In this document: positions 12,648 to 51,921 of the stretch, one piece after another
How positions within the stretch are numbered: position 1 is the stretch's first letter
Layout of the letters: the number at the start of each line of letters is the position of its first letter
Assembly (NCBI RefSeq): GCF_039654945.1
Contig: NW_027361798.1
Coordinates: forward strand, 3,360,079 to 3,412,000
Direction: 5' to 3'
DNA from: Dendrobates tinctorius
Taxonomy: Eukaryota
DNA: 51,922 nucleotides
Made by a program: the position numbers and the translations under genes
Notes under the pieces: model-generated
Databases searched by the model: none
Told to the model about the DNA's origin: nothing
The model's input: only the letters and a program-made list of their open reading frames with translations

Positions 12648-14441
12648 ATGGCCAGAAAACAGTATGATTCATCTAAACCCCTTCATTTAGAAGAAATGAA
12701 GATTTTTTTGTTAGAAGATGATGAGGAAGAACCAGCAGTAACTGAGGATTTAGAGGAATCTAGTGACATTTCATCTGAAGATGAGGTAGCAGAATGTAAC
12801 ACTGATTCTGGAACAGAGCAGGATGGTGATGACACTGATACAGAGGAAACAGACACAGATCTAGCTTATTATTTGGGCAAAGATAAAAATACAAAGTGGA
12901 ACAAAAAGGCACCCAAGAACAAACAGCGCAGAGAATCCCACAATATTATTACACACCTTCCTGGAGTTATTGGAAGTGCTAGAAAAGCTAAAACTGCAGT
13001 GGAATGTTGGAGTAATCTAATTACAGATAGCATGTTGGAAACTATTGTTCGGTTCACTAACCAGTATATTGACACAATCAAAGAGCAATTCTCCAGAGAG
13101 AGGGACATCAAAAACACTGATGTGATTGAACTCAAGGCATTTATTGGCTTGTTATACCTAGCTGGTGCTTTCAGAGCAAATAGGCAAAGTTTGGAGGAGC
13201 TGTGGGGGACAGACGGTGATGGCATCGAAAAATTCAGCCTTGTGATGAATCTGAAACGATTCAAAGTCCTGATCCGTTGCCTCCGTTTCGATGATCGAAG
13301 TACCCGGACAGAACGAAAAGGTTATGACCGGCTTGCACCAATTCGGGACATATTTCAACAATTTATTATGAATTGTCAAAAAAGCTATTGCCCGGGGCAA
13401 AACCTCACTATTGATGAGATGCTTCCAGGTTTCCGTGGAAGATGTGGTTTTCGGCAATATATACCATCAAAGCCAAACAAATATGGAATTAAAATTTTTG
13501 CCATGGTTGATGCAAGGATGATGTACACTATGAACATGGAAGTTTATTGTGGAAGACAGCCACCAGGTCCTTTCAATGTGAGCAACAAGCCTAGTGATGT
13601 GGTAAAGAGAATTGCTGAGCCAATGTTTGGATCTGGTCGAAATATCACTGCTGACAACTGGTTTACTGACTTTGATCTGATTGATTTTTTAAAAACGAAA
13701 AAGCTGTCATATGTGGGAACTGTTAGAAAAAACAAAAGGCAGTTGCCGCCTGATTTTCTATATACAAAAGGCAAACAACAGTATAGCACTATGTTTGGGT
13801 TCAGTAATGGAAAGATTTTAGTTTCTTACATCCCACGCGAGAGGAAAAATGTGATTTTGGTCTCTTCATTACATAATGATTACACCATTGATCCAGAGTC
13901 TGGGGAGCTAAGGAAACCAGAAATCATAACTTTTTATAATTTGACCAAAAGCGGCGTTGACACTGCTGACCAAATGTGTGGCAATTTCAATGTAAGTCGA
14001 AATACCAAACGCTGGCCGATGGTAATCTTCTTTACAATGCTGAATGTGGGTGGCATCAACTCACAAGTAATTTACCTCAGTAATGAACTTAAACAAATGC
14101 GCAGAAGAATGTACCTAAAACAATTGGCTAATGAACTGGTGAGTGGAGAGCTAAGCCTAAGAAGTACAAAGACGGTTGGAATGCCCCTTGCCCTGCAACA
14201 CCGGTTGAAGAGATATCGTCCCAAGGACGTTCCAGAACAAACACCGACTCTACCACCTTCTAAAAGACGCAGTTGTACTACCTGCTCATTTGTATCTGGT
14301 TTCAGAAGGCTTTCTAAATATGACTGCAAAATATGTAAAGAATCAATCTGCCTTTCCCATGCAACTTTCGTCTGCCAGCCTTGCTTTTCTAAGTGTACCT
14401 GTGCTGCTTCTGCTGCAATTGAAACCACTGAAGATGAGTAG
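12648..14441 (+). CDS. piggyBac transposase, intact, 597 aa
   Basis: Acidic N-terminus; DDD triad in TIDEM, TADNWFT and GVDTADQ; FRGRC..YIPSKPNKYGIK block; C-terminal Cys/His-rich domain. Confidence 0.96.
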   Translation: MARKQYDSSKPLHLEEMKIFLLEDDEEEPAVTEDLEESSDISSEDEVAECNTDSGTEQDGDDTDTEETDTDLAYYLGKDKNTKWNKKAPKNKQRRESHNIITHLPGVIGSARKAKTAVECWSNLITDSMLETIVRFTNQYIDTIKEQFSRERDIKNTDVIELKAFIGLLYLAGAFRANRQSLEELWGTDGDGIEKFSLVMNLKRFKVLIRCLRFDDRSTRTERKGYDRLAPIRDIFQQFIMNCQKSYCPGQNLTIDEMLPGFRGRCGFRQYIPSKPNKYGIKIFAMVDARMMYTMNMEVYCGRQPPGPFNVSNKPSDVVKRIAEPMFGSGRNITADNWFTDFDLIDFLKTKKLSYVGTVRKNKRQLPPDFLYTKGKQQYSTMFGFSNGKILVSYIPRERKNVILVSSLHNDYTIDPESGELRKPEIITFYNLTKSGVDTADQMCGNFNVSRNTKRWPMVIFFTMLNVGGINSQVIYLSNELKQMRRRMYLKQLANELVSGELSLRSTKTVGMPLALQHRLKRYRPKDVPEQTPTLPPSKRRSCTTCSFVSGFRRLSKYDCKICKESICLSHATFVCQPCFSKCTCAASAAIETTEDE

Positions 14442-17400
14442 AAAATAATTAAGTAACATCTAAGTGCAATATCCTTTAAGTTTTTTTCCATAATTTTATA
14501 TTTAAGCAATAGTTAAGTAAAGATAACTGGAGCCTATTTGGCGGTACTACCGAAAAGTGGTACTTTTAGTTTTAATAAGTTTATGGTTAATAAATGGGTT
14601 TTTTTTGCATCTGATTTGGTGTAATCTCTTTTAATACATTCCTATGAAGGTCACTGACTACTTCTATAGTCCTGAAATTGAAATATGTAGCTACTATAGG
14701 TGGTTTTCTGACCTGTGCTTGTCAGGCACATTGCGCATGAACTGAGGAGAATCTATATTGCGCCTGACGGAGGGTTAAGGTGCGTCAAAGTTTGCATGAG
14801 CAGACGCATAAGTGGGATGCTCATGCTTAGGATGGCGTCGTCTGCGCTTACCAGCCGTGTGCATTCCTCAAAACACTGAAGGACTTTACAGAGGTCATTC
14901 AGCTTCGACCACTGCACGCCTGTCAACTCCATGTCTGCTCTCAAAGTGCCTGGCCGTGTATCCTCCCACAAATGCATTATGGCCTGCCTCTGCTCGCACA
15001 GCCGCTCCACCATGTGCAGGGTGGAGTTCCACCTTGTTGCAATGTCGATAATGAGGCGGTGGTTGGGAAGGTGGAGCAATCGCTGCAGCTTCTGCATACG
15101 AACGGAGTGTACAGGCGACCGGCGGATGTGCGCGCACAGTCTTCGCACCTTATGGAGCAGGGCTGTTAACTCCGGATAATTAGTGAGGAAGCACTGCACC
15201 ACCAGGTTCAAGGTGTGAGCCAAGCAAGGTATGTGGCTGAGTTTTGAAAGGGCTATGGCTGCCACAAAATTACGGCCGTTATCACTAACTACCTTGCCTG
15301 CCTCAAGATGTATACTGCCCAGCCATGACTCAGTTTGTCGCTTCAAGTACTCGGCCAGCACCTCGGCGGTGTGTCTGTCGCCCAAACACATCATCTGCAA
15401 CACAGCCTGCTGACGCTTTCCACTAGCTGCTCGATAGGGGGACACATCGTGTGCAACAGTGGCAGCTGCAGATGGAGTGCTTGTACGACTGCGCTCTGTG
15501 GACGAGCTTTCGCTTCTGGAGGAGGAGGAGGAAGAGGAGGAGGGTCGAACGCCTACAGCCAACTGTTTCCTATACCGTGGGCTAGGCAGCACTGTCCCAC
15601 CACCGCTATCCCCTGTGGACCCTGCATCCACCACATTAACCCAGTGCGCAGTGATGGACACGTAACGGCCCTGGCCATGCCGACTGGACCATGCATCAGT
15701 TGTGAGGTGCACCTTTCCGCTCATTGACTGCTTGAGTGCATGGACAATGCGGTCTTTCACATGATGGTGGAGGGCTGGGATAGCTTTGCGAGAGAAGAAG
15801 TGGCGACTGGGTAGGTCATAGCGTGGTACTGCATAGGCCATGAGTTCGCGGAAAGCTATGCTTTCCACCAACCGAAAGGGCATCATCTCAAACGAGATTA
15901 GTTTGGCAATGTGGGCGTTCAAACCCAGTGTACGCGGATGAGAGACTGAGTACTTTCTTGACCTACTCATAGTGTCTGGGAGGGTGAGCTGGACTTGAGA
16001 GCTGCATATGGTGGAAGTAGCGGTGGACAGGGCGGACTGAGAGAGGGTTGATGATGGTGATGGAGTTGGTGTTCTTTCTGATGGCCTAGAATCAGTCTTT
16101 CGTTGATATAACAGTGGGATTCCCTGACTGCTGTGGTCTTGCAACGACACCTCAACATTTGCTGCTGTGCTAACCGGTGGGCTTACAGTGGGGGAAACAA
16201 TGTAGCGTTGCTGACTACCTTCGTTGTGATCAGTTGCACATGGGGCACTTGAGGTTTGGTGTTGTGTCCACACTTGCAAGTGCATGCTGGTTAAGTGTCT
16301 AAGCATGCAACTGATATTCAAATTTTTCAGATTTTTCCCTCGGCTAAAGGTCTTTGCGCACTTCTTACAGATAACCTTGGCCTGATCATGAGGATTTTGT
16401 TCAAAAAAGTGCCACACTGCACTCTTCCTACTTTGGCAGACATTTTGCGGCCTAGCACGCTGTGATCTTTTGACCCTCTGGACAAGCTGTCCAGCAACTC
16501 TTTTGATGTTTGGAACCTGTCTTTGGAGTGCTCCGGGCCTGCCAGATAACAGCTGTGGCGATGTCGATGTCTGCTGTGGATGCTCCTCATCTGAGCTATT
16601 GGAAGCAGCACCCTCTTCCCCCAATGGATGCCAATCTGGGTCAACAACTGGGTCATCCATCACCTCCTCTTCTATGTCATGTGCACCTTCCTCTGTGTCA
16701 CCGTGTATGGTGGTATAGTGTGCGGGAAGGGGCACCTGAGTCTCATCATGGTCAGAATCTGGCTCTGCACACTGCGAGGACAATGTAGTGCTCTGAGTGA
16801 ATGTACCAGCAGAATCATCCATCAGCGGCTGTGCATCAGTGCACTCCATGTCAGATTCATCTTGGCCTGGGTAATTCACCATTTCACTTGATAATCCAGG
16901 CATGGTATGTGAAAACAGCTCCATGGAGTAATCAGTAGTATGGCCTGCGTCATCCTTCAATCTTGGTTGGGGTGAAGGACACAAGGAAAGGTGTGGTTCA
17001 TGAACATGAGCCTCCAATGACGACTCAGTGCTTTTACTTTTTACAACTGAAGAAGAGGAGGCGATAGAGCTGGAGGCTGAGTCAGCAATGTAAGACAAAA
17101 CTTTTTCCTGATGCTCTGGCTTTAAAAGCGGTTTGCCAACTCTTAGAAAACTAAGCGTTCGAGGCCTTATGTAGCCAGACGATGACGCAGGGTCAGCACC
17201 TCCTGCATTCGGTCCTATTTTGCTCTTGCCACTACCATCAGATCCACCACCAACACCATCATTACCAGCTGCCAACCCCCGCCCAATTCCACGGCCTCTT
17301 CCACCAGCCTTCCTCATTTTTGGTAGAAATGTAGACAAAATCCAACAAACTATATAGTAATGTAAAACAAGGTAAAAGGTGTCTATAGGACAGGGGAGAT

Positions 17401-17632
17401 TTTGAATTTCTGCAGACACTTGTGGACACTGGACACTTTTGGATTGTGTGAGGCCCACTGATATCTGAGCGCTATGTGACAGGCTCGATGGCACAGCTGT
17501 GACAAAAGTGACTAGAGGATAAGGGAGATTGGATTGCTTTTAAAAAAGCAGTTTGCGGAGCAGTGGGTAAACAGCAATGCAGGAATGTCAGGAAGCCTTA
17601 GAAGGCAGCCCAACAACCAACACCACTGATAC

Positions 17633-19015
17633 TGTTCCTATCTTCAAAAAGGGGAAGAAGGTGGACCCAGGCAACTATAGGCCGGTGAGTCTGACTTCTA
17701 TACCAGGAAAGATCTTTGAACAAATTATTAAACAACATGTATGTCAATACCTGGATAAGAATGAAGTGATTAAACAGAGTCAGCATGGGTTTGTAACTAA
17801 TAAGTCATGTCAGACTAATTTAATTTCCTTCTATGATGGTATTACTGATTGGGTGGATCAAGGAAATGCTGTAGATATAGTATATCTTGACTTCAGCAAA
17901 GCATTTGACAAAGTCTCTCATACAATCCTTATTGAAAAAATGACTAAGTATGGAATGGACAAGGCAACTGTTAGGTGGATTCATAACTGGCTTAGTGATC
18001 GGACCCAAAGAGTGGTCGTAAATGGCTGCACATCCAGTTGGAAGAATGTCTCAAGTGGGGTACCACAGGGCTCTGTCCTGGGCCCTGTATTGTTCAACAT
18101 CTTTATCAACGATTTAGATGAAGGAATTGAGGGTAAACTGATTAAATTTGCTGATGACACAAAGCTAGGAGGGATAGCTAATACTAGAGAAGAGAGAGAG
18201 AGGATTCAAAAAGATTTAAATAAACTGGAGAAGTGGGCAGCAACTAACAGAATGGTTTTTAACAGGGAGAAATGCAAAGTACTACATCTGGGCAATAAAA
18301 ATGAAAAAAGCATATATAGAATGGGAGGAATAGGGCTAAGTGACAGCACATGTGAAAAAGACTTGGGTATACTAATAGATCACAGACTGAATATGAGTCA
18401 ACAGTGTGATGCAGCAGCAAAAAAGGCAAATGCAATTCTAGGATGTATTAACAGAAGCATACAGTTTAGATCACGTGAAGTAATTATTTCCCTCTACTCC
18501 TCTTTGGTCAGACCTCATCTGGAATATTGTGTCCAATTTTGGGCACCACATTTTAAAAAAGACATCAACAAACTGGAGCAAGTTCAGAAAAGAGCGACCA
18601 GAATGGTGACCGGTCTGCAAACCCTGTCTTATGAGGAAAGGTTGCAGGATTTGGGAATGTTTAGTTTGCAAAAGAGAAGACTGAGAGGAGACTTAATAGC
18701 TGTCTACAAATATCTAAAGGGCTGTCACATTGTAGAAGGATCAACTTTATTCTCATTTGCACAAGGAAAGACTAGAAGCAATGGGATGAAACTGAATGGG
18801 AGGAGACACAGATTAGATATTAGAAAAAACTTTTTGACAGTTAGAGTGATCAATGAGTGGAACAGGCTGCCACGAGAAGTGGTGAGTTCTCCTTCAATGG
18901 AAGTCTTCAAACAGAGGCTGGACAGACATCTAACTGGGATGATTTAGCGAATCCTGCTTTGAGCAGGGGGTTGGACCAGATGGCCCAGGAGGTCCCTTCC
19001 AACTCTACGATTATA
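17633..19015 (+). mobile_element. CR1 copy 2, 5'-truncated, RT frame open to 18947, inserted in the hAT-B upstream repeat
   Basis: Near-identical to copy 1; TGATAC on both sides (17627-17632, 19016-19021); uninterrupted site visible in the sister repeat at about 19681-19720. Confidence 0.96.
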
Positions 19016-23192: not shown

Positions 23193-25495
23193 ACCAGAGG
23201 AATTTACTCACTGTTCCAAGCACTAATAGAGGATTATACCCACTATGTCATGAACTAATAGAGCATTATATTCACTGTGCTAGGAGGCACTAATAGAACT
23301 TGGCACAGTGGGTATAATCCTCTGGTATTAGTGCTTGAGACAGTGGGAACAATCTGCTATTAGTGCTTGGCACAGTCGTTATAATCCTCTATTAGTGCTT
23401 GGCACAGTGGGTATAATCCTCTATTAGTGCCTGGCACAATGGGCATAATCCTCTGGTATTAGTGCTTGGCACAGTGGGTATAATCTGCTATTAGAGGATT
23501 ATACCCACTGTGCCAAGTTCTAATAGTGCTTGGCACAGTGGGTAGAATCTGCTATTAGTGCTTGGCACAGTGGGTATAATCTGCTATTAGAGGATTATAC
23601 CCACTGTGCCAAGTTCTAATACCAGAGGATTATGCCCATTGTGCCAGGCACTAATAGAGGATTATACCCACTGTGCCAAGCACTAATAGTACATGGCACA
23701 GTCGTTATAATCCTCTATTAGTGCTTGGCACAATGGGCATAATCCTCTGGTATTAGTGCTTGACACAGTGGGTATAATCTGCTAATACCAGAGGATTATG
23801 CCCATTGTGCCAGACACTAATAGAGGATTATACCCACTGTGCCAAACACTAATAGAGGATTATAACGACTGTGCCATGTACTATTAGTGCTTCACACAGT
23901 GGGTATAATCCTCTATTAGTGCCTGGCACAATGGGCATAATCCTCTGGTATTAGTGCTTGGCACAGTGGGTATAATCTGCTATTAGAACTTGGAACAGTG
24001 GGTATAATCCTCTAATAGCAGATTATACCCACTGTGCCAAGCACTAATACCAGAGGATTATGCCCATTGTGCCAGGCACTAATAGAGGATTATACCCACT
24101 GTGCCAAGTACTAATAGCAAATTATACCCATTGTCTCAAGCACTAATACAGGATTATACACACTGTGCCAAGCACTAATAGAGGATTATGCCCACTGTGC
24201 CATGTACTAATAGTGCTTGAGACAGTGGGAACAATCTGCTAATTCCAGAGGATTATATTCAGTGCCAAGCACTAATAGAGGATTATACCCATTGAGCCAA
24301 GCACTAATAGCAGATTATACCCACTGTGCCAAGTATTAATGGCAGATTATACCCACTGTCTCAAGCACTAATAGAGGATTATACCCATTGAGCCAAGCAC
24401 TAAGAGAAGATTATACCCACTGTGCCAAGTATTAATGGCAGATTATACCCACTGTCTCAAGCACTAATTCTAGAGGATTATATACACTGTGCCAAGCACT
24501 AATAAATCATTATATTCACTATGCCAAGTACTAATAGAGGATTTTAGCCAATGTACCAAGCACTAATAGAGGATTATACCCACTATGCCAAGCACTAATA
24601 GAGGATTATACCCACTGTCTCAAGCACTAATTCCAGAGGATTATATTCACTGTGTCAAGGACTAATACCAGCGGATAATACCCGCTGTGCCAAGCACTAA
24701 TTCAGGGATATATTCACTGTGGCAAGCACTAATAGAGTATTATACCCACTGTGCTAGGAGGCACTAATAAAGGATTATACCCACTGTGCCAAGAACTAAT
24801 AGCAGATTATACCCACTGTCTCAAGCACTGATTCCAGACGATTACATTCACTGTGTCAAGCACTAACAGAGGGATATATCCACTGTGCCAAGCACTAATA
24901 GTGCCTTGCACAGTGGGTATAATCCTCTATTAGAGGATTATGCCCACTGTGCCAAGCACTATTAGTGCTTGGAGGCACAGTGGGTATAATCCCCTATTAG
25001 TGCTTGACACAGTGGGTATAATCCTCTATTAGTGCTTGGAACAGTGAGTAAAATCCTCTGGTATTAGTGCCTTGCACAGTGGGTATAATCCTCTATTAGT
25101 GCTTGGCATAGTGGGTATAATCCTCTAATACCAGAGGATTTTACTCACTATTCCAAGCACTAATAGGGGATTATACCCACTGCCTCAAGCACTAATTCCA
25201 GAGAATTATATTCACTGTGCCAAGGACTAATACCAGCGGATAATACCCGCTGTTCCAAGCACTAATTCAGGGTAATATTCACTGTGCCAAGCACTAATAG
25301 GGTATTATTATTATTCCCACTGTGCCAAGCACTAATAGAGGATTATACCCACTGTGCCAAGCACTAATAGAGGATTATACCCACTGTGCCAAGCACTAAT
25401 AGAGGATTATACCCACTATGCCAAGCACTAATAGGGGATTATACCCACTGTGCCAGGCACTAATAGAGGATTATACCCACTGTGCCAGGCACTCA
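23192..25495. repeat. 32-bp satellite (TGTGCCAAGCACTAATAGAGGATTATACCCAC; 35-bp variants) in mixed orientation
   Basis: Period 32 visible at 25321-25490; reverse-complement blocks interleaved. Confidence 0.95.
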
Positions 25496-25689
25496 TAGCT
25501 CTCCGGTCAGGTGGAGGCGTCTGACTGATGATGATCTCCCAGAGATTGAATTATTTCCAGGCCGGAATCTCACATTGTCAGTAATTTCTCGTTCCTCCAG
25601 CGGCGCTGACAGGACGAGGTTTGCGGAATTTTCTTGTTAGCATAATACAGAGAAGCGGGAAATTCACATCACCAACTGTCCTGTGCTCA

Positions 25690-26212: not shown

Positions 26213-27742
26213 GCCCACATCTCACGTGAGAGGCTGCAATTCCCGCTGGGGTCTAGCGGTCGCTGCTGGTGTGATCGCCGGGACCGGCTTGTGACGTTGC
26301 GCATTGGGGGAGACGTTCTCTCTTCTGGAGCTGATCCAGTGAGTAGTCTCAGTGTGAGGTGGGGCACAGATGATCCGGGTGTATGGGGGAATCGATCGGC
26401 CGCACAGTCACCTCCTATGATGCTGCAGTTACTACAGAGCAGAAATCCGAGTGCTGGTAATAAATGTGGTTGTGCCACGTCTCCTGCTGCTGAGATCCTG
26501 TGGGTTGTAGGATGGCTGCGAGGAGTGGAATGCGGCTGCACTGATGAATGGACGCCGGTGTGAACGCTCCTGAGCAGCGGCTCAGGATTGGGGTATCAAC
26601 AGGATACCTACATGCGATGAGAGGGGCTGTCTGTGTTTCTGCGCCACCACATGGGCAGGGAGGGACGGTGCAGGAATACAGGGTCGCTCTGCCTGTGATC
26701 AGGAGAACATCTGCCCACATCACACTTTGCACCAATCACCGGATCTAAATCCCGGAGCAAATTATCATATACAGGAATATACCCACTGTGCCAACTGCTA
26801 TAGCAGGAATTATATCCACTGAGTCACCCACTAGAGACATATATAGAGGATTATACCCACTGCTCTGTCACCAGGTCCCAACTCTACAGTAACGTCATCC
26901 GAGATGTGTGGAAAGGAATCAATGACCCCAACTATGGAACCACAGCTCTGCCCCTAGTGCCGGCGCCTCCAACAGAGACCAGGAGGAGGTCGCTGCTCTC
27001 TATGGAGCTGCCCCGGGCTCAGTGGGTCCCTGTGATCTCGGGACTCGATGTCGCAGCCCGGGCGGCTCTCTTCCTCCGGACACACTGCGGTCCTGGCTGC
27101 GGCCTCCTCTCTCGGTGCTGCCCCTGTCTTCAGCCCCTGGAGCTCGCACCGCTGTTTGCACTTTCTGATCTATTCTGGGGTTGAGCCTTGTAACAGGGTG
27201 TATGGGCGCTATATCCGGACACAGACCCCTCTGTGCACAGTACAGAGCTCGGAGTGCTGCTGTGAGATGAAGGGAAGGTAACGGCGGCGGCCGATCAGGG
27301 GAGCGATCAGCAGCTCCGGGGAGCAGGACTCTGTGCTCTGCGGGTGCAGCTGCCCCAGACCGGACGGCTCACGTCACAGCGATCTCCGCTACTAAGCAGA
27401 GGGGCCGGGAATAATCCGAAGGACAGGAAAGGGATTGAGCGGGAAATTCAAAACCATCAACGGGTCTGTGATCAGCCAATGAGAGAAGTCCGCAGGCGCG
27501 ACCAATCCCAGAGCCAGGTATGGACTCCTCCGGTTAACTCCTTAGTGACCGTGCGCTGCTCAATTCCCCCTTCTGTATGAGGCTGCATGGAAGCAGGAAC
27601 AGAACCGCTGGATCTACCGATAACGGAACCGGCCAGAATAACGGCCCTCAGACAACTGTGGACTAAGCAGCCCAGATATTACCGAACCAGGAGGAAGGAA
27701 GGAGAAATGGCAGGAAGGAGCTCATCTGTGGGAGGATTTGGT

Positions 27743-27758
27743 GGCTCTGAGAAGAGCC
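27743..27758 (-). terminator. Histone 3' stem-loop (H3 copy 1)
   Basis: GGCTCT TCTC AGAGCC ACCA followed by a GATGAGCT downstream element. Confidence 0.95.
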
Positions 27759-27787
27759 TTTGTGTTGTGGTTGGTGCTCGGGAATAT

Positions 27788-28315
<528 letters not shown>

Positions 28316-28617
28316 TTACATTAAATAGAAGCCAATAAAAACCTGATTTGTTTGACCAATTATCGTGAAGCAAACCGCGGCCTCCCGCCCTGTAACCCCG
28401 CCTCCTCCATGATGCGGCTCTCAGCAGATCGCTCTCATCTCCCGCTGTACAGAATAGAGAAATCCGGTGACGTCATCTCCAGCGCAGGAGGAGACCTGGA
28501 GCAGCCGCCACCGCACTGCCATGACCCCGTGTACACAGCGCTGTACAGTGCAGCTCCCCATTATCACCAGATCACACCCATCCTGACACTGCGCCCGGAT
28601 TATCAGCAGCTCATAAA

Positions 28618-31600
28618 CTGCAGAGGAGGCACTGATCATACAGCTCTGCAGTGAGGAGGTGGCACTGATCATACAGCTCTGCAGGGAGGAGGTGGTGGCA
28701 CTGATCATACAGCTCTGCAGGGAGGAGGTGGTGGCACTGATCATACAGCTCTGCAGGGAGGAGGTGGCACTGATCATACAGCTCTGCAGGGAGGAGGTGG
28801 CACTGATCATACAGCTCTGCAGGGAGGAGGTGGCACTGATCATACAGCTCTGCAGTGAGGAGGTGGTACTGATCATACAGCTCTGCAGGGAGGAGGTGGC
28901 ACTGATCATACAGCTCTGCAGGGAGGAGGTGGTGGCACTGATCATACAGCTCTGCAGGGAGGAGGTGGTGGCACTGATCATACAGCTCTGCAGGGAGGAG
29001 GTGGCAGTGATCATACAGCTCTGCAGGGAGGAGGTGGTAGTGATCATACAGCTCTGCAGGGAGGAGGTGGCACTGATCATTCAGCTCTGCAGGGAGGAGG
29101 TGGAGGAACTGATCATACAGCTCTGCAGCAAGGAGATGATGGCACTGATCATACAACTCTGCAGGGAGGAGGTGGTGGCACTTATCATTCAGCTCTGCAG
29201 GGAGGAGGTGGTGGCACTGATCATACAGCTCTGCAGCGAGGAGGTGATGGCACTGATCATACAGCCCTGCAGCAAGGAGATGATGGCACTGATCATATAG
29301 CCCTGCAGCAAGGAGATGATGGCACTGATCATACAGCCCTGCAGCGAGGAGATGATGGCACTGATCATACAGCCCTGCAGCGAGGAGGTGATGGCACTGA
29401 TCATACAGCCCTGCACCGAGGAGGTGGCAGTGATTATACAGCTCTGCAGGGAGGAGGTGGTGGCACTTATCATACAGCTCTGCAGGGAGGAGGTGGTAGT
29501 GATCATACAGCTCTGCAGGGAGGAGGTGGCACTGATCATTCAGCTCTGCAGGGAGGAGGTGGAGGAACTGATCATACAGCTCTGCAGCAAGGATATGATG
29601 GCACTGATCATACAACTCTGCAGGGAGGAGGTGGTGGCACTTATCATTCAGCTCTGCAGGGAGGAGGTGGTGGCACTGATCATACAGCTCTGCAGCGAGG
29701 AGGTGATGGCACTGATCATACAGCCCTGCAGCAAGGAGATGATGGCACTGATCATATAGCCCTGCAGCAAGGAGATGATGGCACTGATCATACAGCCCTG
29801 CAGCAAGGAGATGATGGCACTGATCATACAGCCCTGCAGCGAGGAGGTGATGGCACTGATCATACAGCCCTGCACCGAGGAGGTGGCAGTGATTATACAG
29901 CTCTGCAGGGAGGAGGTGGTGGCACTTATCATACAGCTCTGCAGGGAGGAGGTGGTAGTGATCATACAGCTCTGCAGGGAGGAGGTGGCACTGATCATTC
30001 AGCTCTGCAGGGAGGAGGTGGTGGCACTGATCATACAGCTCTGCAGGGAGGAGGAGGAGGCACTGATCATACAGCTCTGCAGGGAGGAGGTGGTGGCACT
30101 TATCATTCAGCTCTGCAGGGAGGAGGTGGTGGCACTGATCATACAGCTCTGCAGGGAGGAGGTGGTGGCACTTATCATTCAGCTCTGCAGGGAGGAGGAG
30201 GAGGCACTGATCATACAGCCCTGTAGGGAGGAGGTGGAGGCACTGATCATACAGCTCTGCAGGGAGGAGGTGGTGGCACTGATCATACAGCTCTGCAGGG
30301 AGGAGGAGGAGGCACTGATCATACAGCTCTGCAGGGAGGAGGTGGTGGCACTTATCATTCAGCTCTGCAGGGAGGAGGTGGTGGCACTGATCATACAGCT
30401 CTGCAGGGAGGAGGAGGAGGCACTGATCATACAGCCCTGCAGGGAGGAGGTGGAGGCACTGATCATACAGCCCTGCAGCGAGGAGGTGATGGCACTGATC
30501 ATACAGCTCTGCAGCGAGGAGGTGGCAGTGATTATACAGCTCTGCAGGGAGGTGATGGCACTGATCATACAGCTCTGCAGGGAGGAGGTGGTGACACTGA
30601 TCATACAGCTCTGCAGGGAGGAGGTGGTGGCACTGATCATACAGCTCTGCAGGGAGGAGGTGGTGGCACTGATCATACAGCTCTGCAGGGAGGAGGTGGT
30701 GGCACTGATCATACAGCTCTGCAGGGAGGAGGTGGTGGCACTGATCATACAGCTCTGCAGGGAGGAGGAGGAGGCACTGATCATACAGCTCTGCAGGGAG
30801 GAGGTGGTGGCACTTATCATTCAGCTCTGCAGGGAGGAGGTGGTGGCACTGATCATACAGCTCTGCAGGGAGGAGGAGGAGGCACTGATCATACAGCCCT
30901 GTAGGGAGGAGGTGGAGGCACTGATCATACAGCCCTGCAGGGAGGAGGTGGAGGCACTGATCATACAGCCCTGCAGCGAGGAGGTGATGGCACTGATCAT
31001 ACAGCCCTGCAGCGAGGAGGTGATGGCACTGATCATACAGCTCTGCAGCGAGGAGGTGGCAGTGATTATACAGCTCTGCAGGGAGGTGATGGCACTGATC
31101 ATACAGCTCTGCAGCGAGGAGGTGATGGCACTGATCATACAGCCCTGCAGCGAGGAGATGATGGCACTGATCATACAGCCCTGCAGCGAGGAGGTGGAGG
31201 CACTGATCATACAGCCCTGCAGCGAGGAGGTGGAGGCACTGATCATACAGCCCTGCAGCGAGGAGGTGGCAGTGATTATACAGCTCTGCAGGGAGGAGGT
31301 GGTGGCACTTATCATTCAGCTCTGCAGGGAGGAGGTGGTGGCACTGATCATACAGCCCTGCAGGGAGGAGGTGGAGGCACTGATCATACAGCTCTGCAGG
31401 GAGGAGGTGGTGGCACTGATCATACAGCTCTGCAGCGAGGAGGTGATGGCACTGATCATACAGCTCTGCAGGGAGGAGGTGGAGGCACTGATCATACAGC
31501 TCTGCAGGGAGGAGGTGGTGGCACTGATCATACAGCTCTGCAGCGAGGAGGTGATGGCACTGATCATACAGCCCTGCAGCGAGGAGGAGATGACACTGAT

Positions 31601-32122
31601 CATACAGCTCTGCAGCGAGGAGGTGGCAGTGATTATACAGCTCTGCAGGGAGGTGGCACTGATCATACAGCCCTGCAGGGAGGAGGTGGAGGCACTGATC
31701 ATACAGCTCTGCAGCGAGGAGGTGGCAGTGATCATACAGCTCTGCAGGGAGGTGATGGCACTGATCATACAGCTCTGCAGGGAGGAGGTGGTGGCACTGA
31801 TCATACAGCTCTGCAGGGAGGAGGTGATGGCACGGATCATACAGCTCTGCAGGGAGGAGGTGGTGGCTCTGATCATACAGCTCTGCAGGGAGGAGGTGGT
31901 GGCACTGATCATACAGCTCTGCAGGGAGGAGGTGGTGGCAGTGATCATACAGCTCTGCAGCGAGGAGGTGATGGCACTGATCATACAGCCCTGCAGCGAG
32001 GAGGTGGCAGTGATTATACAGCTCTGCAGGGAGGAGGTGGTGGCACTGATCATACAGCTCTGCAGGGAGGAGGTGGTGGCAGTGATCATACAGCTCTGCA
32101 GTGAGGAGGTGGTGGCTCTGAT
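28618..32122 (-). repeat. 33/36-bp tandem array (about 100 units) derived from the H1 3'-processing signal
   Basis: Minus-strand unit ATCAGTGCCACCACCTCCTCCCTGCAGAGCTGTATG is continuous with the H1 stem-loop 3' arm ATCAGAGCC-ACCAC. Confidence 0.95.
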
Positions 32123-32129
32123 AAGAGCC
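32114..32129 (-). terminator. Histone 3' stem-loop (H1)
   Basis: AAA GGCTCT TATC AGAGCC ACCAC followed by AGAGCTGTA. Confidence 0.95.
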
Positions 32130-32158
32130 TTTGTGGGATGAGGACAGGGCGGCTCCGC

Positions 32159-32794
32159 TTATTTCTTGGCCGCGGGCTTCTTGGATTTAGCCACCTTCTT
32201 AGCCGGAGTCCTGGCAGGTTTGGGTTTCGCCGCCTTCTTAGCGGGGCTCTTTGTCACCTTCTTGGGCTTCGGAGCGGCCTTCGGCTTCTTAGGGCTCTTG
32301 GCTGCTTTTTTGGCTGCAGCGGGCTTCTTGGCCTTTTTCGGGCTCTTCTTGGCCGCGGTCGGAGCCTTCTTGGGCTTCTTCGGGGATTTGGCCGCTTTCT
32401 TGGCTGCGGGTTTCTTGGCCGCAGCCGCCGGCTTTTTCTTGTCCTTCGTCTCCTGCTTCTTGTTCAGCTTGAATGACCCGGAGGCGCCGCTGCCCTTCAC
32501 CTGGAGCAGGGCGCCCTTGGTGACCAGACTCCTGACGGCCAGCTTCAGGCGGCTGTTATTCTTCTCCACATCGTACCCTCCGGCAGCCAGAGCCTTCTTC
32601 AGGGCGGCTAGAGACACCCCGCTGCGCTCCTTGGAGGCGGACACGGCTTTGACGATCAGCTCGGACACGCTGGGGCCGGAGGGCTTCTTGCTCTTCTTGG
32701 CGCTCCCTGCAGCGGATTTCTTTGGCTGCTTCTTGGACTTGGCGGCCGGTTCGGCGGGAGGAGGAGGCGCGGCGGCTGGTGCGGTCTCTGCCAT
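32159..32794 (-). CDS. H1: Linker histone H1, somatic replication-dependent type, 211 aa
   Basis: MAETAPAA start; globular domain [34 protein letters not shown]; K/A/P-rich tail with SPKK motifs. Confidence 0.98.
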
Positions 32795-32859
32795 TGTGTA
32801 ACGAAAAACTGACAGAATAATCTCCTGCAAGGAAAACACTGAGGACTGAGCGGGAGCAG

Positions 32860-32955
32860 CCTCATATATACAGTCACACTGCGCACTGATTGGCTGCCGA
32901 GCTGCGTCCTCCTAAGCTTCTATTGGCTGACACTGGACACAGGCCCCGCCCCCTG
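32860..32955 (-). promoter_or_regulatory. Histone H1 promoter
   Basis: TATATA, two CCAAT boxes and a GC box GGGGGCGGGG on the minus strand. Confidence 0.75.
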
Positions 32956-35507: not shown

Positions 35508-38500
35508 ATGAAGAAGGCAGGGAGTAAGGCACGTGGTCGTGGAGTTTCAGCAGGGAGAGGACGGGGGGATTCGGTGTCTGCTGCGGCCACCAGTGACCCG
35601 GCATCCCCCAGTTTTAGCAGGCAACAGTCCTTTATGCGCAGCTTTTTAGGACCTCGCCATACCCCACTGCTGCGGGACGAACAAACTGAAGCAGTTGTCG
35701 GATGGATGGCAGCTAATGCATTGAATTCAATGACTTCCACGTCCTCTCAGGGCCAGAGCACCGAAGAGCAACTATCTGTCTCTTCACCACCTGCCAAATT
35801 GCCCAGGCAGTCAGAGAGCCCTGGACAGGAGCCATCTCAATCTTTACTTCTGTTCTCAGAATCTGTTGGCTTGGAAAGAGGTGGCCAGCCAAGCAGCATT
35901 CTAGAGCGTGAAGAAGAGGGAGTATGCAGTGATGCGCAACTGCTTTGTCCCTCTGAATCTGAAGAGGCGGGTGGGCCAGTGCCTATGGTCAGCACACCTC
36001 AGTACGCATCAGATGATGATAAGACTCAGGTGACACTTTCTGGTGCGTACGGTGCTGGCGAGACAACCCAGGACCAGCCGGTGCTTGAAGAGGGGAGTGG
36101 AGATGATGAGGTCCTTGACCCATCATGGCGTGAGGAACAGGAAGGTGGTGGGAGCAGCTCTGAGGAAGAGATTCCCTGAACGGCCAAGACAGGAGGGAGA
36201 GGGAGGGGGCAGACTTGGTTGCCTGTAGCCTCCACTTCGGCACCCGTTAGGAGCATTCCTCTTCCAAAACCCAAAACGGGCGCTCCCAAGACTTGCAGTG
36301 CGTGGTCCTTTTTTGACACAGTTGTAGATGACATTTGCTTTGTCAAATGCAAGCTGTGTCATCAGAAAGTCAAAAGAGGGAAAAGTGTCAGCAACCTCAA
36401 TACCACAAAAATGTGGAAACATGTGCGGACCAAGCACGAGCTGGAGTTACACAGACACACTGAAGACGTAGGCCAACCTACAGCACCACCTACCACCTCT
36501 TCAGCTCATGTTGGGGCCTCTTCCTCCAGCTCACACACAGCTGGTTCGGCTTCCTCACAGGATCGCCAAGGAAGAACCTCTGGCACTGTTGTCCGGACAC
36601 CCTGTGACATTCCACCCACAGCACCACGTTCCCTGTCATCCTCACTCCCAGGCCACTCTACAGCCATCGGTCGCACAGGCATGGGAGAAAAGGCGGCCAT
36701 ACTCCGCAAACCATCCCCGAGCACAGGCTCTGAATGCTGGCATTGCCAAACTACTGGCCCTTGAAATGCTCTCATTCAGGCTGGTGGAGACTGACACCTT
36801 CCGGAACTTCATGGCATTGGCAGTCCCACAATACACTGTGCCCAGCCGCTTTGATTTCAGCAGGCGAGCCGTCACTGCCCTGCAAAAACATGTGGAGGGA
36901 AAAATAAAACATGCTCTACTAAACGCCGTCAGTAGCAAGGTCCACCTGACCACCGATGCGTGGACCAGTAACCATGGACAGGGACGATACCTTTCCCTCA
37001 CTGCCCATTGGGTCAATGTTGTGGAGCCGGGTACAGATCTGGAGAGTGGCGCTGTACGTGTTCTGCCAACTCCACGGATTGCAGGAATCCAGTCTGTACA
37101 CATAGACTCCTCATCCTACTCAAGTTCCTCTGAAACAGCGCAGCAGGAGCCTGTTACGACCGATATGAGCACAGCCGTGGCCAAACATCAACAGGCCGTA
37201 CTGAAATTAATTTCTTTGGGGAATCGAAGCCACACAGCGCAGGAGCTCTGGAATGCCATCAAGCAGGAGAGCGATGTGTGGTTTGTGCCAGCGAATCTCC
37301 AGCCAGCAGGCTGGGTAGTGTGTGACAATGGCCGAAATCTGGTGGCAGCTCTGGGCCTAGGCAACCTCACTCACATCCCATGTCTGGCACATGTGCTCAG
37401 CTTGGTCGTGCAGAGTTTTCTGAGGGACTATCCGGATCTTGATGCACTGCTGCACAAGGTCCGCATAGAGTGCGCTCACTTGCGTCGTTCCAGCACGGCA
37501 AGATCGCGCCTTGCTGCTCTGCAGCGCCAATTACGCCTTCCGGAACATCACATCATATGTGACCTACCCACCAGGTGGAATTCAACGTTACATATGTTGG
37601 AGCGGTTGTGTGAGCAGCAGGCAGCAGTCATGGAGTACCAGCTGCATCAGGCGCAAACAAGTCGCACTGTGCGCCGGTCACACTTCACCACCACTGAGTG
37701 GACCTCTATGAAGGACATCTGCTTCGTTTTGCGTGCCTTCGATGATTCCACGCGGATGGCGAGTGCAGACGATGCACTAGTCAGCATGACTGTCCCCCTT
37801 ATCTGCATGCTTCAAAAAACACTGCAAGCACAAAGGGAGGAGGTTCTGGAAGAGGTGGAGGATGAGGAGTCCCAAATGCCATCTGCTTCTGGACAGTCTG
37901 CGCTACGTGGTTCCTCACAAAGGCCTAGGCAGGGGACACTTTGTGAGGAGGATGAGGAGGAGTCGATGGAGGAGGAAGACATCTCTCCACAGGAGGGAGG
38001 TACACAAAGCTCTAATCAGTATGTACAGCGAGGGTGGGGTGATGCAGAGCAGGCAGAGATGACGACTCAAGCAGGGGACAGCGGTTCTTGGGCAGTTGGG
38101 AGTCTGCAGCACATGGTTGACTTCATGCTGCAGTACCTGAGAAACGACCGCCGCATCGCCCATATTCTCAACACAGCTGATTATTGGGTGTACACCCTCC
38201 TAGATCCTCGCTACTGGGACAACTTACAAAGCCTCACCGTTGAACTGGGAGCGTAAAATGTACCAAGACACACTGGTGCAGTCCATCATGTTCTCCATTC
38301 CAACCGACAGCACTGCTGCTAGTGCTTTACAAAGCAGCTCTGTGCATCGAGGCAGTGGAGGAAGCTCTGCACAGAGGGAGCAGAGGCAGCGCCTCAGCAT
38401 AAGGCAAGACCACTATGGCCCAAATGAGTCAAAGTTTTGAGTGCCCGCCACAAATGTCTACACCATCACAGATGGCTCCAGTCAGTAGGAGGCAACGTTT

Positions 38501-41353: not shown

Positions 41354-43636
41354 TAGTGTTGAGCATTCCGATACCGCAAGTATCGGGTATCGGCCGATAC
41401 TTGCTGTATCGGAATTCCGATACCGACTTCCGATATTTTTTCAATATCGGAATTCGGCATCGGAATCGGAAGTTCAAAGTTGATTGACAGACTGACGTCA
41501 TCATGATGCGCGGTGTGTGCGCATCATGATGCGCCGTCATTTCGGGCCTTCTGGGGGTCTCTGCCGGCCTGCCGGGGGGCTGTGCCGGCCTGCCGGGGGG
41601 CTGTGTGGACTGCCCGGGGTCTCTGCCGGCCTGCCGGGGGGCTGTGCCGGCCTGCCGGTGGTCTGTGCACCCTGTGGGGGTCTGTACCGGCCTGCCGGGG
41701 GGCTGTGCCGGCCTGCCGGGGGGCTGTGCTGATGTCCGGGGGTCTGTGCAAGCATCGTCCGATGGGACTACAAGTCCCATCGGGCGATGCCTGCTACCAT
41801 GACAGTGATTGACACATTAGCCAATGATGGGACAGTAGTAGTCCCATCATCCGGCTAATGTGTTAAATGTTAAAAAAAAAAAAAATACTACATACATACT
41901 ACATGCATGCTACATACATACTACATGCTACATACATACTACATATATACTACATACATGCTACATACATACTACATGCTACATACATACTACATGCATA
42001 CTACATACATACTACATGCATACTACATACATACTACATGCATGCTACATACATACTACATATGTGTGGGAATTTCCCACACAGCAATGGCATAAAGTGA
42101 GACTAGGGACTTTTTTTTTTTTTAAGTGGCGGAGGAATACAGTGCGGAAGGATACCTACCTTCCGTCATTGGATTCCTGCAGCCCGTAGAGAACGGCAGC
42201 ATCATCTGATGCTGCCGTTCTCTACCCAAGATCGTCGTGGGACACACTCGTGGACTGCTTCGGATCGTGGGTGAGTATTTTTGTGGTTTGTTATGTTAAT
42301 ATTTATTCCGGAAAGACAATGGCTTCGGGGAACAATGTGACAAGTATTGGTAAGTATGTTACTCTATGTTATATGTACTGTATGTCTATGTATGTATTGT
42401 ATGAATGTATTGTATGTATGTAGTATATATGTGGTATGTATGTAGCATGTAGTATGTATGTAGCATGTAGTATGTAGCATGCATGTAGTATATATGTAGT
42501 ATGTATGTAGCATGTAGTATGTATGTAGTATGTATGTAGTATGTATGTAGTATGTATGTAGTATGCATGTAGTATATATGTAGTATGTATGTAGCATGTA
42601 GTATGTATGTAGCATGCATGTAGTATGTATATGGTATGTATGTAGCATGTAGTATGTATGTAGCATGCAGTATGTATGTAGTATATATGTAGTATGTATG
42701 TAGCATGCAGTATGTATGTAGTATATATGTAGTATGTATGTAGCATGTAGTATGTATGTAGTATGTATGTAGCATGCATGTAGCATGCAGTATGTATGTA
42801 GCATGCATGTAGTATATATGTAGTATGTATGTAGCATGTAGTATGTAGCATGCATGTAGTATATATGTAGTATGTAGCATGTAGTATGTATGTAGCATGC
42901 ATGTAGTATATATGTGTTATGTATGTAGCATGTAGTATGTATGTAGCATGCATGTAGTATATATGTGGTATGTATGTAGCATGCAGTATGTATGTAGCAT
43001 GCATGTAGTATATATGTAGTATGTATGTTGCATGTAGTATGAATGTAGCATGTATGTAGTATGCATGTTGTATGTATGTAGCATGTAATTTTTTTTTTTT
43101 TTTTTTTACATTTAACACATTAGCCGGATGATGGGACTACTACTGTCCCATCATTGGCTAATGTGTCAATCACTGTCATGGTAGCAGGCATCGCCCGATG
43201 GGACTTGTAGTCCCATCGGACGATGCCTGCACAGACCCCCGGAGCCTGCACAGCCCCCCGGCAGGCCGGCACAGCCCCCCGGCAGGCCGGCACAGCCCCC
43301 CGGAGCCTGCACAGCCCCCCGGCAGGCCGGCACAGCCCCCCGGCAGGCCGGCACAGCCCCCCGGAGCCTGCACAGACCACCGGCAGGCCGGCACAGACCA
43401 CCGGAGCCTGCACAGACCCCCTGGCAGGCCGGCACAGCCCCCCGAAAGGCCCGTACAGACCCCAGAGAGGCTGTACAAGGGCAGGAAAGGGTTTTTCTTA
43501 TTCCGATACCGGAAGTCCCATAGACTTGAATGGGACTTCCGGTATCGGAATCGGCGATACCGATACTTTTTTTAAAGATCGGCCGATACCATCCGATACG
43601 ATACTTTGAAGTATCGGACGGTATCGCTCAACTCTA
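41354..43636. mobile_element. Non-autonomous hAT element, 2283 bp, with long internal inverted arms, inserted in gag
   Basis: TIRs TAGTGTTGAGC / GCTCAACTCTA; exact 8-bp TSD GTTGCCAC (41346-41353, 43637-43644). Confidence 0.95.
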
Positions 43637-48517: not shown

Positions 48518-48640
48518 ACTAATAGAGGATTATACCCACTGTGACGAACAATAATAGAGGATTATACCCATTGTGCCAAGCACTAATAGCAGAGGATTTT
48601 TACCCACTGTGCCAGGCACTAAGAGGATTATATTAACTGT
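48518..48640 (+). repeat. About four degenerate units of the 32-bp satellite
   Basis: CTAATAGAGGATTATACCCACTGTG repeats. Confidence 0.88.

Positions 48641-51501: not shown

Positions 51502-51921
<420 letters not shown>

What the first reader, a model, noticed from the sequence alone, without database searches (positions are those of the whole stretch)
28618..32129. About 100 tandem copies of the histone 3'-processing signal directly downstream of H1: a candidate U7 snRNP binding array
Seen: on the H1 sense strand the stem-loop GGCTCTTATCAGAGCC runs into ACCAC-CTCCTCACTGC-AGAGCTGTA-TG. The segment from the loop onward (ATCAGTGCC-ACCAC-CTCCTCCCTGC-AGAGCTGTA-TG) is then repeated for 3.5 kb, ending about 300 bp before the H3 promoter on the same strand. 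The unit near 31865 keeps the exact stem arm ATCAGAGCC. Known: replication-dependent histone pre-mRNA is cut by CPSF73 about 5 nt after the stem-loop, guided by U7 snRNA. The U7 5' segment UACAGCUCU is the exact complement of AGAGCUGUA. Strong pairing reduces SLBP dependence, and amphibian oocyte histone loci are read through into flanking repeats and carry U7-rich bodies. Inference: H1 read-through RNA would present about 100 correctly spaced cleavage-site plus U7 modules without complete stem-loops. It could act as a fail-safe terminator shielding the H3 promoter, a U7 sponge or histone-locus-body scaffold, or a source of phased 33-36 nt RNAs. A frequent variant, AGGGCUGUA, still pairs through G-U. 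The null is neutral slippage expansion.
Basis: partly seen in the sequence, partly recalled or inferred. Interest (0 to 1): 0.9.

Follow-up and report, generated by a model that had tools for sequence, protein, structure and literature searches.

The report
Satellite grown from H1's 3'-end signal
Behind a frog histone H1 gene, the short signal that tells the cell where to cut the H1 message has been copied head-to-tail about 98 more times; the array is real, recurs in this genome and in related poison frogs, but every test possible here fits an ordinary expanding DNA repeat rather than a selected U7-binding device.

Summary
A 36-bp repeat of 99 units, founder included, fills window 28637-32122 on the H1 strand. 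It starts inside the H1 3' stem-loop and ends about 300-380 bp before the H3 promoter.

Each unit carries the 3' stem arm, the ACCAC cleavage context, a C/T-rich spacer and the H1 downstream element AGAGCTGTA. That 9-mer is the exact complement of UACAGCUCU in published human and mouse U7.

The functional reading is not supported:
- The 9-mer is exact in only 62 of 99 units and is no less variable than its flanks.
- No unit is a stem-loop.
- The array shows plain unequal-crossover dynamics: a 459-bp block of 13 units duplicated with 2 differences, and length changes only in the CCN tract.

The array is not private. Earlier notes of this scan report the same satellite behind other H1 copies of this genome. 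Sequencing runs of two related coded species hold its words at very high depth. A Ranitomeya imitator H1 gene model reads into the founder and a second unit.

Array words also occur in RNA-labelled runs, but DNA carry-over cannot be excluded.

Best reading: a neutral H1-derived satellite (about 0.75) that passively carries U7-complementary sites. A U7-related role remains possible (about 0.1-0.2) and testable.

The parts
32159..32794 (-). Histone H1 coding sequence (211 aa plus stop), intact
   Evidence: ORF list. It is 88-90% identical over the full length to H1 of Phyllobates and Ranitomeya, and all listed hits carry PF00538.
32114..32129 (-). H1 3' stem-loop GGCTCT-TATC-AGAGCC
   Evidence: Read directly. 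The Rfam Histone3 match at 32088-32134 scores 31.9 bits, E = 2e-6, just under the 34-bit gathering score.
32087..32122 (-). Founder unit: loop and 3' arm of the H1 stem-loop, ACCAC cleavage context, spacer, H1 HDE and TG. It differs from the array consensus at 2 positions.
   Evidence: 2 mismatches to the consensus.
32089..32097 (-). H1 histone downstream element AGAGCTGTA, complement of U7 UACAGCUCU
   Evidence: The duplex with the mouse U7 5' 20 nt is -16.2 kcal/mol, the strongest of the six histone 3' ends in the window; mouse H2a scores -16.9.
28637..32086 (-). 98 further tandem units (73 of 36 bp, 24 of 33 bp, 1 of 30 bp; 37 distinct unit types counting the founder)
29078..29995 (-). Two copies of a 13-unit, 459-bp higher-order block (29537-29995 and 29078-29536) that differ at 2 bases
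28600..28636 (-). Degenerate terminal partial unit (ATCAGTGCC, TCCTC, TGCAG ...), the distal edge of the array
28199..28599 (-). Unique spacer with the H3 promoter (CCAAT-type boxes and a TATA-like GATAAATA). There is no AATAAA or ATTAAA on this strand anywhere between the H1 stop and the H3 ATG.
27788..28198 (-). Histone H3 coding sequence, same strand as H1. Its own stem-loop is at 27743-27758.
   Evidence: Rfam Histone3 match at 27718-27763, 32.9 bits.

Best explanation
This is a satellite (minisatellite-type) array born from the H1 3' flank.

Origin (inferred): a 36-bp segment was duplicated. It runs from the loop of the H1 stem-loop to 2 nt past the histone downstream element. The duplication probably happened by slippage between ATCAG(A/T)GCC-like short repeats.

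Growth: the array then expanded by replication slippage and unequal crossing-over. It spread among H1 copies through the concerted evolution that is usual for tandem histone clusters.

Consequence: because the duplicated segment lies directly behind the stem-loop, every unit inevitably carries the cleavage context and the U7-complementary HDE. This is a by-product of where the seed lay, not a selected design.

What is shown: the homology of the units to the H1 signal, the higher-order duplications, the 3-bp length changes, and the presence of the satellite at high abundance in independent samples and related species.

What is inferred: the seeding mechanism, neutrality, and the spread by concerted evolution.

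H1 itself keeps a complete canonical signal and should be processed normally at the founder unit. Any read-through RNA would carry many moderate U7 sites, with unknown and probably minor consequences.
For: Unit anatomy: each unit matches the canonical histone 3' end (AG(T/A)GCC, ACCAC, spacer, AGAGCTGTA).

Edges: the founder and the distal-most units share the CTCACTGC state, while the centre is homogenised to the consensus.

Repeat dynamics:
- 37 unit types occur in runs and blocks.
- Unit identity peaks at a lag of 13 units.
- A 459-bp block is duplicated with 2 differences.
- All length variants are multiples of 3 and lie inside the CCN-periodic tract.

No excess conservation of the 9-mer:
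- It is exact in 62 of 99 units.
- 12 units carry changes that break pairing.
- Diversity is 0.071 against 0.069 and 0.097 in the flanks.
- Window rank is 20 of 36.
- Fisher p = 0.71.

Abundance and spread:
- Summed word depth of array bins is about 250,000 in a DNA-like run of coded organism B, against about 100-1,800 over the H1 CDS.
- Array words are held by organisms A, B and D.
- The tail of the R. imitator model P0010 translates the stem-loop, the founder and a second unit.
- Earlier scan notes list arrays from 24 units to more than 26 kb behind other H1 copies. Such freedom in length argues against a length-dependent function.
Against: The unit consensus is shared as exact 31-mers with two related species. 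Meanwhile the H1 3' UTR just upstream differs at 5 of 13 positions in one of them. This could reflect constraint, although slow turnover of a large homogenised family explains it as well.

87 of 99 units keep nine contiguous pairs with U7 if G-U is allowed.

Predicted unit duplexes (median -14.0 kcal/mol) are not far below a strong mouse HDE (-16.9).

The H1-sense array RNA is predicted to be weakly structured, so the sites would be accessible.

Array words occur in RNA-labelled runs at depths at or above the H1 CDS.

The conservation test has little power, because variants spread by block duplication rather than as independent events.
Confidence: 0.75

Rival explanations
1. Fail-safe processing and termination array. 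H1 transcripts that escape cleavage at the founder site are bound by U7 snRNP at downstream units. CPSF73 cuts them without SLBP, which gives entry to 5'-3' degradation and releases Pol II before it runs into the H3 promoter about 300 bp beyond the array.
For: - The units keep the HDE at the founder's spacing from a CA cleavage context in most copies.
- There is no poly(A) signal on this strand between H1 and H3, so no alternative 3'-end signal exists.
- H3 follows on the same strand here, and also in Phyllobates terribilis and Ranitomeya variabilis.
- Substrates with strong U7 pairing are processed without SLBP (PMC7026596).
- A contig from an RNA-labelled run of organism D runs from the H1 CDS past the cleavage site to the end of the founder unit (record 27).
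Against: - Only 9 contiguous base pairs form. In PMC7026596 a substrate reduced to 9 bp was cut at under 5% even with its stem-loop, and SLBP independence was shown for 15 bp.
- No unit has a stem-loop.
- There is no extra conservation of the 9-mer.
- One or a few units would be enough for this role. Array length reportedly ranges from 24 units to more than 26 kb.
- The other histone genes of the window lack such arrays.
- The RNA evidence cannot be separated from DNA carry-over.
Confidence: 0.12
2. U7 sponge or histone-locus-body scaffold. Array RNA, or the locus as it is transcribed, concentrates U7 snRNP at the histone cluster. This helps nucleate or size the body, or buffers free U7.
For: - There are about 100 U7-complementary sites per array, and many arrays per genome.
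- The sense RNA is weakly structured.
- From established knowledge: amphibian oocyte histone loci carry U7-containing spheres (Cajal bodies), and newt histone clusters are read through into flanking satellite. Gall et al. 1981 and Diaz et al. 1981 are listed; their content is from my own knowledge.
- The satellite is kept in at least three related species.
Against: - There is no evidence of stable array RNA. RNA-labelled runs of organism A hold only 2-3% of the array words while holding H1 words.
- U7 bound to a downstream cleavage product is normally freed by CPSF73 5'-3' degradation (PMC7026596).
- There is no site-specific conservation.
- Other vertebrates form histone locus bodies without such arrays (established knowledge).
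Confidence: 0.06
3. DNA-level element. The G-rich strand motif GGGAGGAGGTGGTGG acts as a protein-binding, pausing or insulating tract between H1 and H3 (MAZ-like or G-quadruplex-type), independent of U7.
For: The plus strand carries five G-runs per unit. Its RNA folds more stably than shuffles (z = -2.15). The array sits between two co-oriented genes. The resemblance to MAZ pause sites is from memory only.
Against: The CCN tract is the most variable part of the unit in both sequence and length. No factor or structure was tested. Nothing here distinguishes this from neutrality.
Confidence: 0.04
4. The array is a protein-coding repeat or an assembly artefact.
For: All unit lengths are multiples of 3, and four of the six frames are open for long stretches, up to 788 aa.
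Against: - The ATG-bearing frame is broken by TGA in the 10 GCTGAATG units.
- Two database searches with array ORFs found nothing.
- The 3-bp steps lie in a CCN-periodic tract where slippage by 3 is expected.
- Independent samples and species hold the words, which rules out an artefact.
Confidence: 0.01

Closest known systems
Histone-cluster-associated satellite DNA of newts (Notophthalmus satellite 1 between histone repeats, read through on lampbrush loops)
   Same: Both are tandem repeats embedded in an amphibian histone cluster, directly downstream of histone genes. Both are potentially transcribed when 3' processing or termination fails. (Diaz et al. 1981 and Gall et al. 1981 are listed; the content is from my own knowledge. 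Read-through transcription of newt satellite 2 is stated in the abstract of PMC2114352.)
   Different: The newt monomer is about 220 bp and is not known to derive from a histone signal. Here the 36-bp monomer is itself the H1 half stem-loop plus cleavage site plus HDE. Transcription is not shown here.
Canonical replication-dependent histone 3' processing signal (stem-loop plus HDE, recognised by SLBP and U7 snRNP)
   Same: The founder unit is the working H1 signal. The units keep the 3' arm, the ACCAC-type context, the spacing and the U7-complementary core.
   Different: The units lack the 5' arm, so they have no SLBP site and give no Rfam Histone3 match. 37% have a changed 9-mer. The units are non-genic and repeated about 100 times.
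Ordinary minisatellites and satellites that arise from gene-flanking or regulatory sequence and evolve by unequal exchange
   Same: Head-to-tail units, higher-order blocks, edge units that retain older states, a length-variable internal tract, and sharing of the family among related species with local variants.
   Different: The seed happens to be a known RNA-processing signal, and the family is tied to a multicopy gene. No description of such a satellite turned up in two full-text searches.

Membership tests
Histone 3' UTR stem-loop (Rfam RF00032) | 6-bp stem, 4-nt U-rich loop and conserved flanks (CAAAGGCUCUUnUCAGAGCCACC): the H1 founder site | tested here: inconclusive
   Match at 32088-32134, 31.9 bits, E = 2e-6, full model length. 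This is 2 bits under the 34-bit gathering score. The sequence is canonical by eye.
Histone 3' UTR stem-loop (Rfam RF00032) | The same stem-loop present in each of the 98 repeated units | tested here: not met
   No unit matches, even at E up to 10. The units start in the loop and lack the 5' arm.
Histone downstream element (U7 snRNA target) | Purine-core sequence complementary to the 5' end of U7 snRNA | tested here: met
   AGAGCTGTA is the complement of UACAGCUCU in the human and mouse U7 printed in PMC7026596. It is exact in 62 of 99 units, and 87 of 99 keep pairing with G-U allowed. This species' own U7 was not available.
Histone downstream element (U7 snRNA target) | Position about 10-15 nt downstream of the cleavage site behind a stem-loop | tested here: met
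   In the founder, the core starts 17 nt after the stem. The H4, H2B and H2A genes of the window have theirs at 17-19 nt. The units keep the spacing to the ACCAC context but have no stem-loop.
Histone downstream element (U7 snRNA target) | Actual U7 snRNP binding and U7-dependent cleavage | not testable with these tools
   Needs CLIP, in vitro processing or anti-U7 oligonucleotide experiments.
SLBP-independent U7 substrates | A U7 duplex strong enough to dispense with the stem-loop and SLBP | tested here: inconclusive
   There are 9 contiguous bp. Predicted energies have a median of -14.0 kcal/mol (range -16.2 to -9.9), against -16.9 for mouse H2a. PMC7026596 shows independence for 15 bp and weak cleavage at 9 bp.
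Satellite / minisatellite DNA evolving by unequal exchange | Head-to-tail units with higher-order blocks and homogenised variants | tested here: met
   99 units, 89% matches, a 13-unit 459-bp block duplicated at 99.6% identity, and unit-type runs.
Satellite / minisatellite DNA evolving by unequal exchange | Multiple arrays per genome and sharing among related species | tested here: met
   Array bins have 100-1000 times the summed depth of the H1 CDS in a DNA-like run of organism B. Words are held by organisms A, B and D. The R. imitator gene-model tail reads into the units. Earlier notes list at least 7 other arrays in this genome; these were not re-read here.
Functionally constrained cis-element array | The functional core is less variable than neighbouring unit positions | tested here: not met
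   Diversity is 0.071 against 0.069 and 0.097. The window ranks 20 of 36. Variable sites are 4 of 9 against 15 of 27, p = 0.71. Power is low because variants spread in blocks.

The most novel reading that the evidence does not exclude
The H1-derived satellite is kept in poison-frog histone clusters because its transcripts, or the transcribed locus, recruit U7 snRNP at about 100 sites per array. In that role it would serve as a multi-site backstop for 3' cleavage and termination between H1 and H3, and/or as an RNA scaffold that concentrates U7 in the histone locus body. It would be a satellite DNA whose monomer is a working RNA-processing signal.
Probability: 0.12. Interest if true: 0.85.

Novelty: new variant of a known kind. 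Interest (0 to 1): 0.45.

Why it matters
It is a clear case of a satellite whose origin can be read base by base: its first monomer is the live 3'-processing signal of a histone H1 gene.

Because every unit carries a U7-complementary site, it offers a natural experiment. One can ask whether multiplying an RNA-processing signal has consequences for histone mRNA 3'-end formation, Pol II termination between tandem histone genes, U7 availability or histone locus body assembly.

If it is neutral, as the evidence favours, it still documents how regulatory sequence can seed a satellite that spreads through a multigene cluster and persists across related species. It also warns annotators: gene models already read into it, as the R. 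imitator H1 model does.

Tried and rejected
- Rfam at gathering thresholds found nothing in the whole window. At permissive thresholds only the H1 and H3 stem-loops appear. A string of 'ar14' bacterial sRNA matches at less than half the gathering score are chance hits to the CCUCCUCCC motif.
As the tool itself suggested, I laid the part with fewer copies, 31840-32900.
- DNA of related frogs could not be fetched. The one Logan locus obtained (L001) is a distant H1 with an ordinary unique 3' flank and no array.
- Protein searches with two open frames of the array found nothing. BLASTP of the short 3'-flank translation against the P0010 tail gave no alignment, so the match was read directly from the translations.
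- MAFFT misplaced the 3-bp gaps. I re-aligned by anchoring both unit ends.
- No paper in the held library joins the histone downstream element or U7 with a satellite or minisatellite. No frog U7 sequence text was found.
- I considered estimating transcription from depth ratios. I rejected it because the array-to-unique ratio in the DNA-like run (about 600-4000) can account for the array depth in the RNA-labelled runs through DNA carry-over.
Full report
**What is there**

On the minus strand the window carries three things in order. First is an intact histone H1 gene (CDS 32794-32159). Then comes a tandem array. Then comes histone H3 (CDS 28198-27788) on the same strand. H4 lies beyond on the plus strand.

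Tandem Repeats Finder gives 28628-32122, period 36, 99.2 copies, 89% matches. Parsing the H1-sense strand gives the following:
- a founder unit at 32122-32087;
- 98 further units ending at 28637;
- a degenerate partial unit to about 28600.

Counting the founder, 74 units are 36 bp, 24 are 33 bp and 1 is 30 bp.

The consensus at 3 or fewer mismatches matches 64 times, only inside the array and only on this strand. None is expected by chance.

The founder begins in the loop of the H1 stem-loop GGCTCT-TATC-AGAGCC (32129-32114). It runs through ACCAC, a C/T-rich spacer and AGAGCTGTA-TG. The following units read ATCAGTGCC-ACCAC-CTCCTCCCTGC-AGAGCTGTA-TG. The unit at 31873-31838 has the exact arm ATCAGAGCC.

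**Is the 9-mer really the H1 downstream element?**

Human and mouse U7 snRNA, as printed in PMC7026596, contain GUGUUACAGCUCUUUUAG, so UACAGCUCU is the exact complement of AGAGCUGUA.

Within the window, the 3' ends of H4, H2B and H2A carry AGAGGCTG, AGAGCTGC and AGAGCTGA starting 17-19 nt after their stems. This is the same offset as in H1 (17 nt). That supports both the identity of the element and a conserved U7 5' end in this animal, although its own U7 was not seen.

With the mouse U7 5' 20 nt, the H1 site gives -16.2 kcal/mol, the strongest of the six histone 3' ends in the window. The well-studied mouse H2a element gives -16.9 by the same calculation.

Rfam's Histone3 model matches only the H1 site (31.9 bits) and the H3 site (32.9 bits). 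Both are just under the 34-bit gathering score. It matches none of the 98 units. The units therefore carry half a hairpin plus the cleavage context plus the HDE, not complete processing signals.

**Variation inside the array**

The 9-mer variants are as follows.

| Variant | Units | Effect on U7 pairing |
|---|---|---|
| AGAGCTGTA | 62 | exact |
| AGGGCTGTA | 23 | kept through G-U |
| AGAGCTGAA | 10 | broken |
| AGGGCTATA | 2 | broken |
| AGAGTTGTA | 2 | kept through G-U |

Conservation of the 9-mer compared with the rest of the unit:
- Per-site diversity is 0.071 in the 9-mer, 0.069 in the arm segment ATCAGTGCC and 0.097 in TCCCTGC.
- Among all 36 circular 9-nt windows of the 36-bp units, the HDE window ranks 20th.
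- On distinct unit types, 4 of 9 sites vary against 15 of 27 elsewhere (Fisher p = 0.71).

Its power is limited because variants propagate in blocks.

Predicted U7 duplexes of the units have a median of -14.0 kcal/mol (range -16.2 to -9.9). Shuffled units average -7.2 +/- 2.1.

**Repeat dynamics**

There are 37 unit types arranged in runs and blocks. Unit identity peaks at a lag of 13 units. The 459-bp blocks 29537-29995 and 29078-29536 differ at only 2 bases.

All length changes are 3-bp steps inside the CCN-periodic tract (ACC/TCC repeats). This explains why every unit length is a multiple of three without invoking coding.

Four frames are open for long stretches. However, the ATG-bearing frame is broken by TGA in the GCTGAATG units, and searches with two array ORFs found nothing.

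The founder and the distal-most units share the CTCACTGC state, while the interior is homogenised to CTCCCTGC. This is the usual pattern of arrays evolving by unequal exchange.

**Not private to this copy**

Earlier notes of this scan report the same H1-derived 36-bp satellite at seven or more other places of this genome. Sizes range from about 24 units to more than 26 kb. Two follow-ups reached an 'ordinary repeat' verdict. I could not re-read those loci.

- Array words are held by runs of coded organisms A, B and D. Runs of the assembly sample hold 0.40-0.46 of the words, an independent sample of organism A holds 0.21, and organisms B and D hold 0.12-0.13.
- Laid on 31840-32900, a DNA-like run of organism B (X10) gives summed word depths of 200,000-256,000 on consensus-type units. 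This compares with about 80-1,800 over the H1 CDS and 58-427 upstream of it. The local CTCG-type units get only 1,300-2,400. Depths are summed over contigs and are not copy numbers. Even so, they show a very abundant, consensus-dominated family shared between species.
- The closest H1 proteins are from dendrobatid poison frogs (Phyllobates terribilis, Ranitomeya variabilis, R. imitator), at 88-90% identity over the full length.
- The R. imitator gene model P0010 runs past the H1 stop. Its tail, HKGSYKSHHLLPAELYDQC followed by PPPPPRRAV and a stop, matches two reading frames of the window's stem-loop, founder unit and second unit (HKGSYQSHHLLTAELYDHC; PPPPPCRAV then stop). So at least two units follow an H1 gene in that species.
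- H1 is followed by H3 on the same strand in P. terribilis (gap 1,042 bp) and R. variabilis (gap 883 bp), against 3,961 bp here. This is compatible with shorter arrays there, but no DNA could be fetched.

**Is it transcribed?**

This remains undecided.
- RNA-labelled runs of organisms B and D hold 5-8% of the array words. RNA-labelled runs of organism A hold only 2-3%, while one of them holds 17% of the H1-region words.
- In the laid runs, array bins reach 1,700-2,400 (X18) and 66-80 (X34). H1 CDS values are 25-880 and 0-59 respectively.
- Run X2 of organism A shows an mRNA-like profile. The H1 CDS stands at 7,000-62,000, dropping to 19-46 upstream of the expected start. Its array bins are at 117,000-142,000.
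- One contig of X34 (record 27) runs from the H1 CDS across the stem-loop to the last base of the founder unit.
- However, the array-to-unique depth ratio in the DNA-like run is 600-4,000. A small DNA carry-over would therefore give these array depths. The control bins upstream of H1 are empty or near the detection limit in the RNA runs, and contigs carry no strand.

**Mechanistic plausibility of the U7 reading**

The general premises are sound. U7 base-pairs with the HDE, and substrates with strong U7 duplexes are cut without SLBP (PMC7026596).

In the same paper, though, SLBP independence is demonstrated for a 15-bp duplex. A substrate left with 9 uninterrupted pairs was cut at under 5% even with its stem-loop. 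The units offer 9 contiguous pairs.

The sense RNA is predicted to be poorly structured (z = +0.96), so the sites would be accessible.

No AATAAA or ATTAAA lies on this strand between H1 and H3. Read-through RNA would meet no other 3'-end signal before the H3 gene.

These points keep the terminator and sponge ideas alive but do not support them over the null.

**Conclusion**

The best explanation (about 0.75) is a neutral satellite. It was seeded by duplication of the 36 bp directly behind and including half of the H1 stem-loop. It was expanded and homogenised by slippage and unequal exchange, spread among H1 copies by concerted evolution of the histone cluster, and is shared by related poison frogs. 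Carrying the HDE is an automatic result of where the seed lay.

A U7-dependent backstop terminator (about 0.12), a U7 or histone-locus-body scaffold (about 0.06) and a DNA-level pausing or insulating tract (about 0.04) remain possible.

I found no description of a satellite made of the histone processing signal in the held literature. The nearest known case is the newt histone-cluster satellite that is read through on lampbrush loops, whose monomer is unrelated to the signal.

I rate it a new variant of a known kind, of moderate interest. Its origin is unusually legible and the functional question is directly testable. This scan had already found the same satellite on other DNA of this genome.

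Noticed in passing
window 51502-51912 (-): The second H3 copy reads [10 protein letters not shown], that is Glu instead of Lys at H3 position 4. It is otherwise identical to the H3 at 27788-28198 and has the same 3' flank. It could be a variant copy, a decaying copy or a base error.
   Followed up: no
window 49174 (-), 50336 (+), 26197 (+): The H2A, H2B and H4 3' ends have canonical stem-loops and AGAGCTG-type downstream elements 17-19 nt after the stem. None is followed by a tandem array.
   Followed up: partly
window 28637-32122 (-): Rfam's alphaproteobacterial sRNA model ar14 gives 16 sub-threshold matches along the array (17-26 bits against a gathering score of 58.8). These are chance matches to the CCUCCUCCC motif and a trap for automatic annotation.
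   Followed up: yes
P0010 (Ranitomeya imitator CAJ0937837.1): This public H1 gene model reads through the stop into the stem-loop and two satellite units, which gives it a spurious C-terminal tail. P0003 (R. variabilis) has a different tail, implying an H1 paralogue with another 3' flank (GGAGAAGCTGCA-type element) and no array.
   Followed up: partly
window 23299-25499 and 48520-48622: A 32-bp satellite (CTAATAGAGGATTATACCCACTGTGCCAAGCA) with about 45 copies and orientation switches; a short second patch lies near 48.5 kb. It was already noted by the first stage (s1-369570).
   Followed up: no
window 12648-14441 (+): An uninterrupted 597-aa piggyBac-like transposase ORF. It was already noted by the first stage (s1-369606). 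Several CR1/L2-like reverse-transcriptase ORFs (3983-6196, 17577-18947) and hAT-like ORFs (14753-17494, 36508-38256) fill the space between histone genes.
   Followed up: no
window 41545-43471: A large palindrome-like arrangement. 21-bp GC-rich arrays at 41545-41749 and 43225-43463 lie in opposite orientation. They flank 11-bp (ATACTACATAC)n arrays that are also in opposite orientation (41885-42062 and 42379-43087).
   Followed up: no
window 1608-2970: A 30-bp tandem array, about 47 copies at 89% matches (CGTACACGCGCGGCTCCTCTCCGTACACCT), with 21-bp sub-variants. All frames are open, which produces long spurious ORFs.
   Followed up: no
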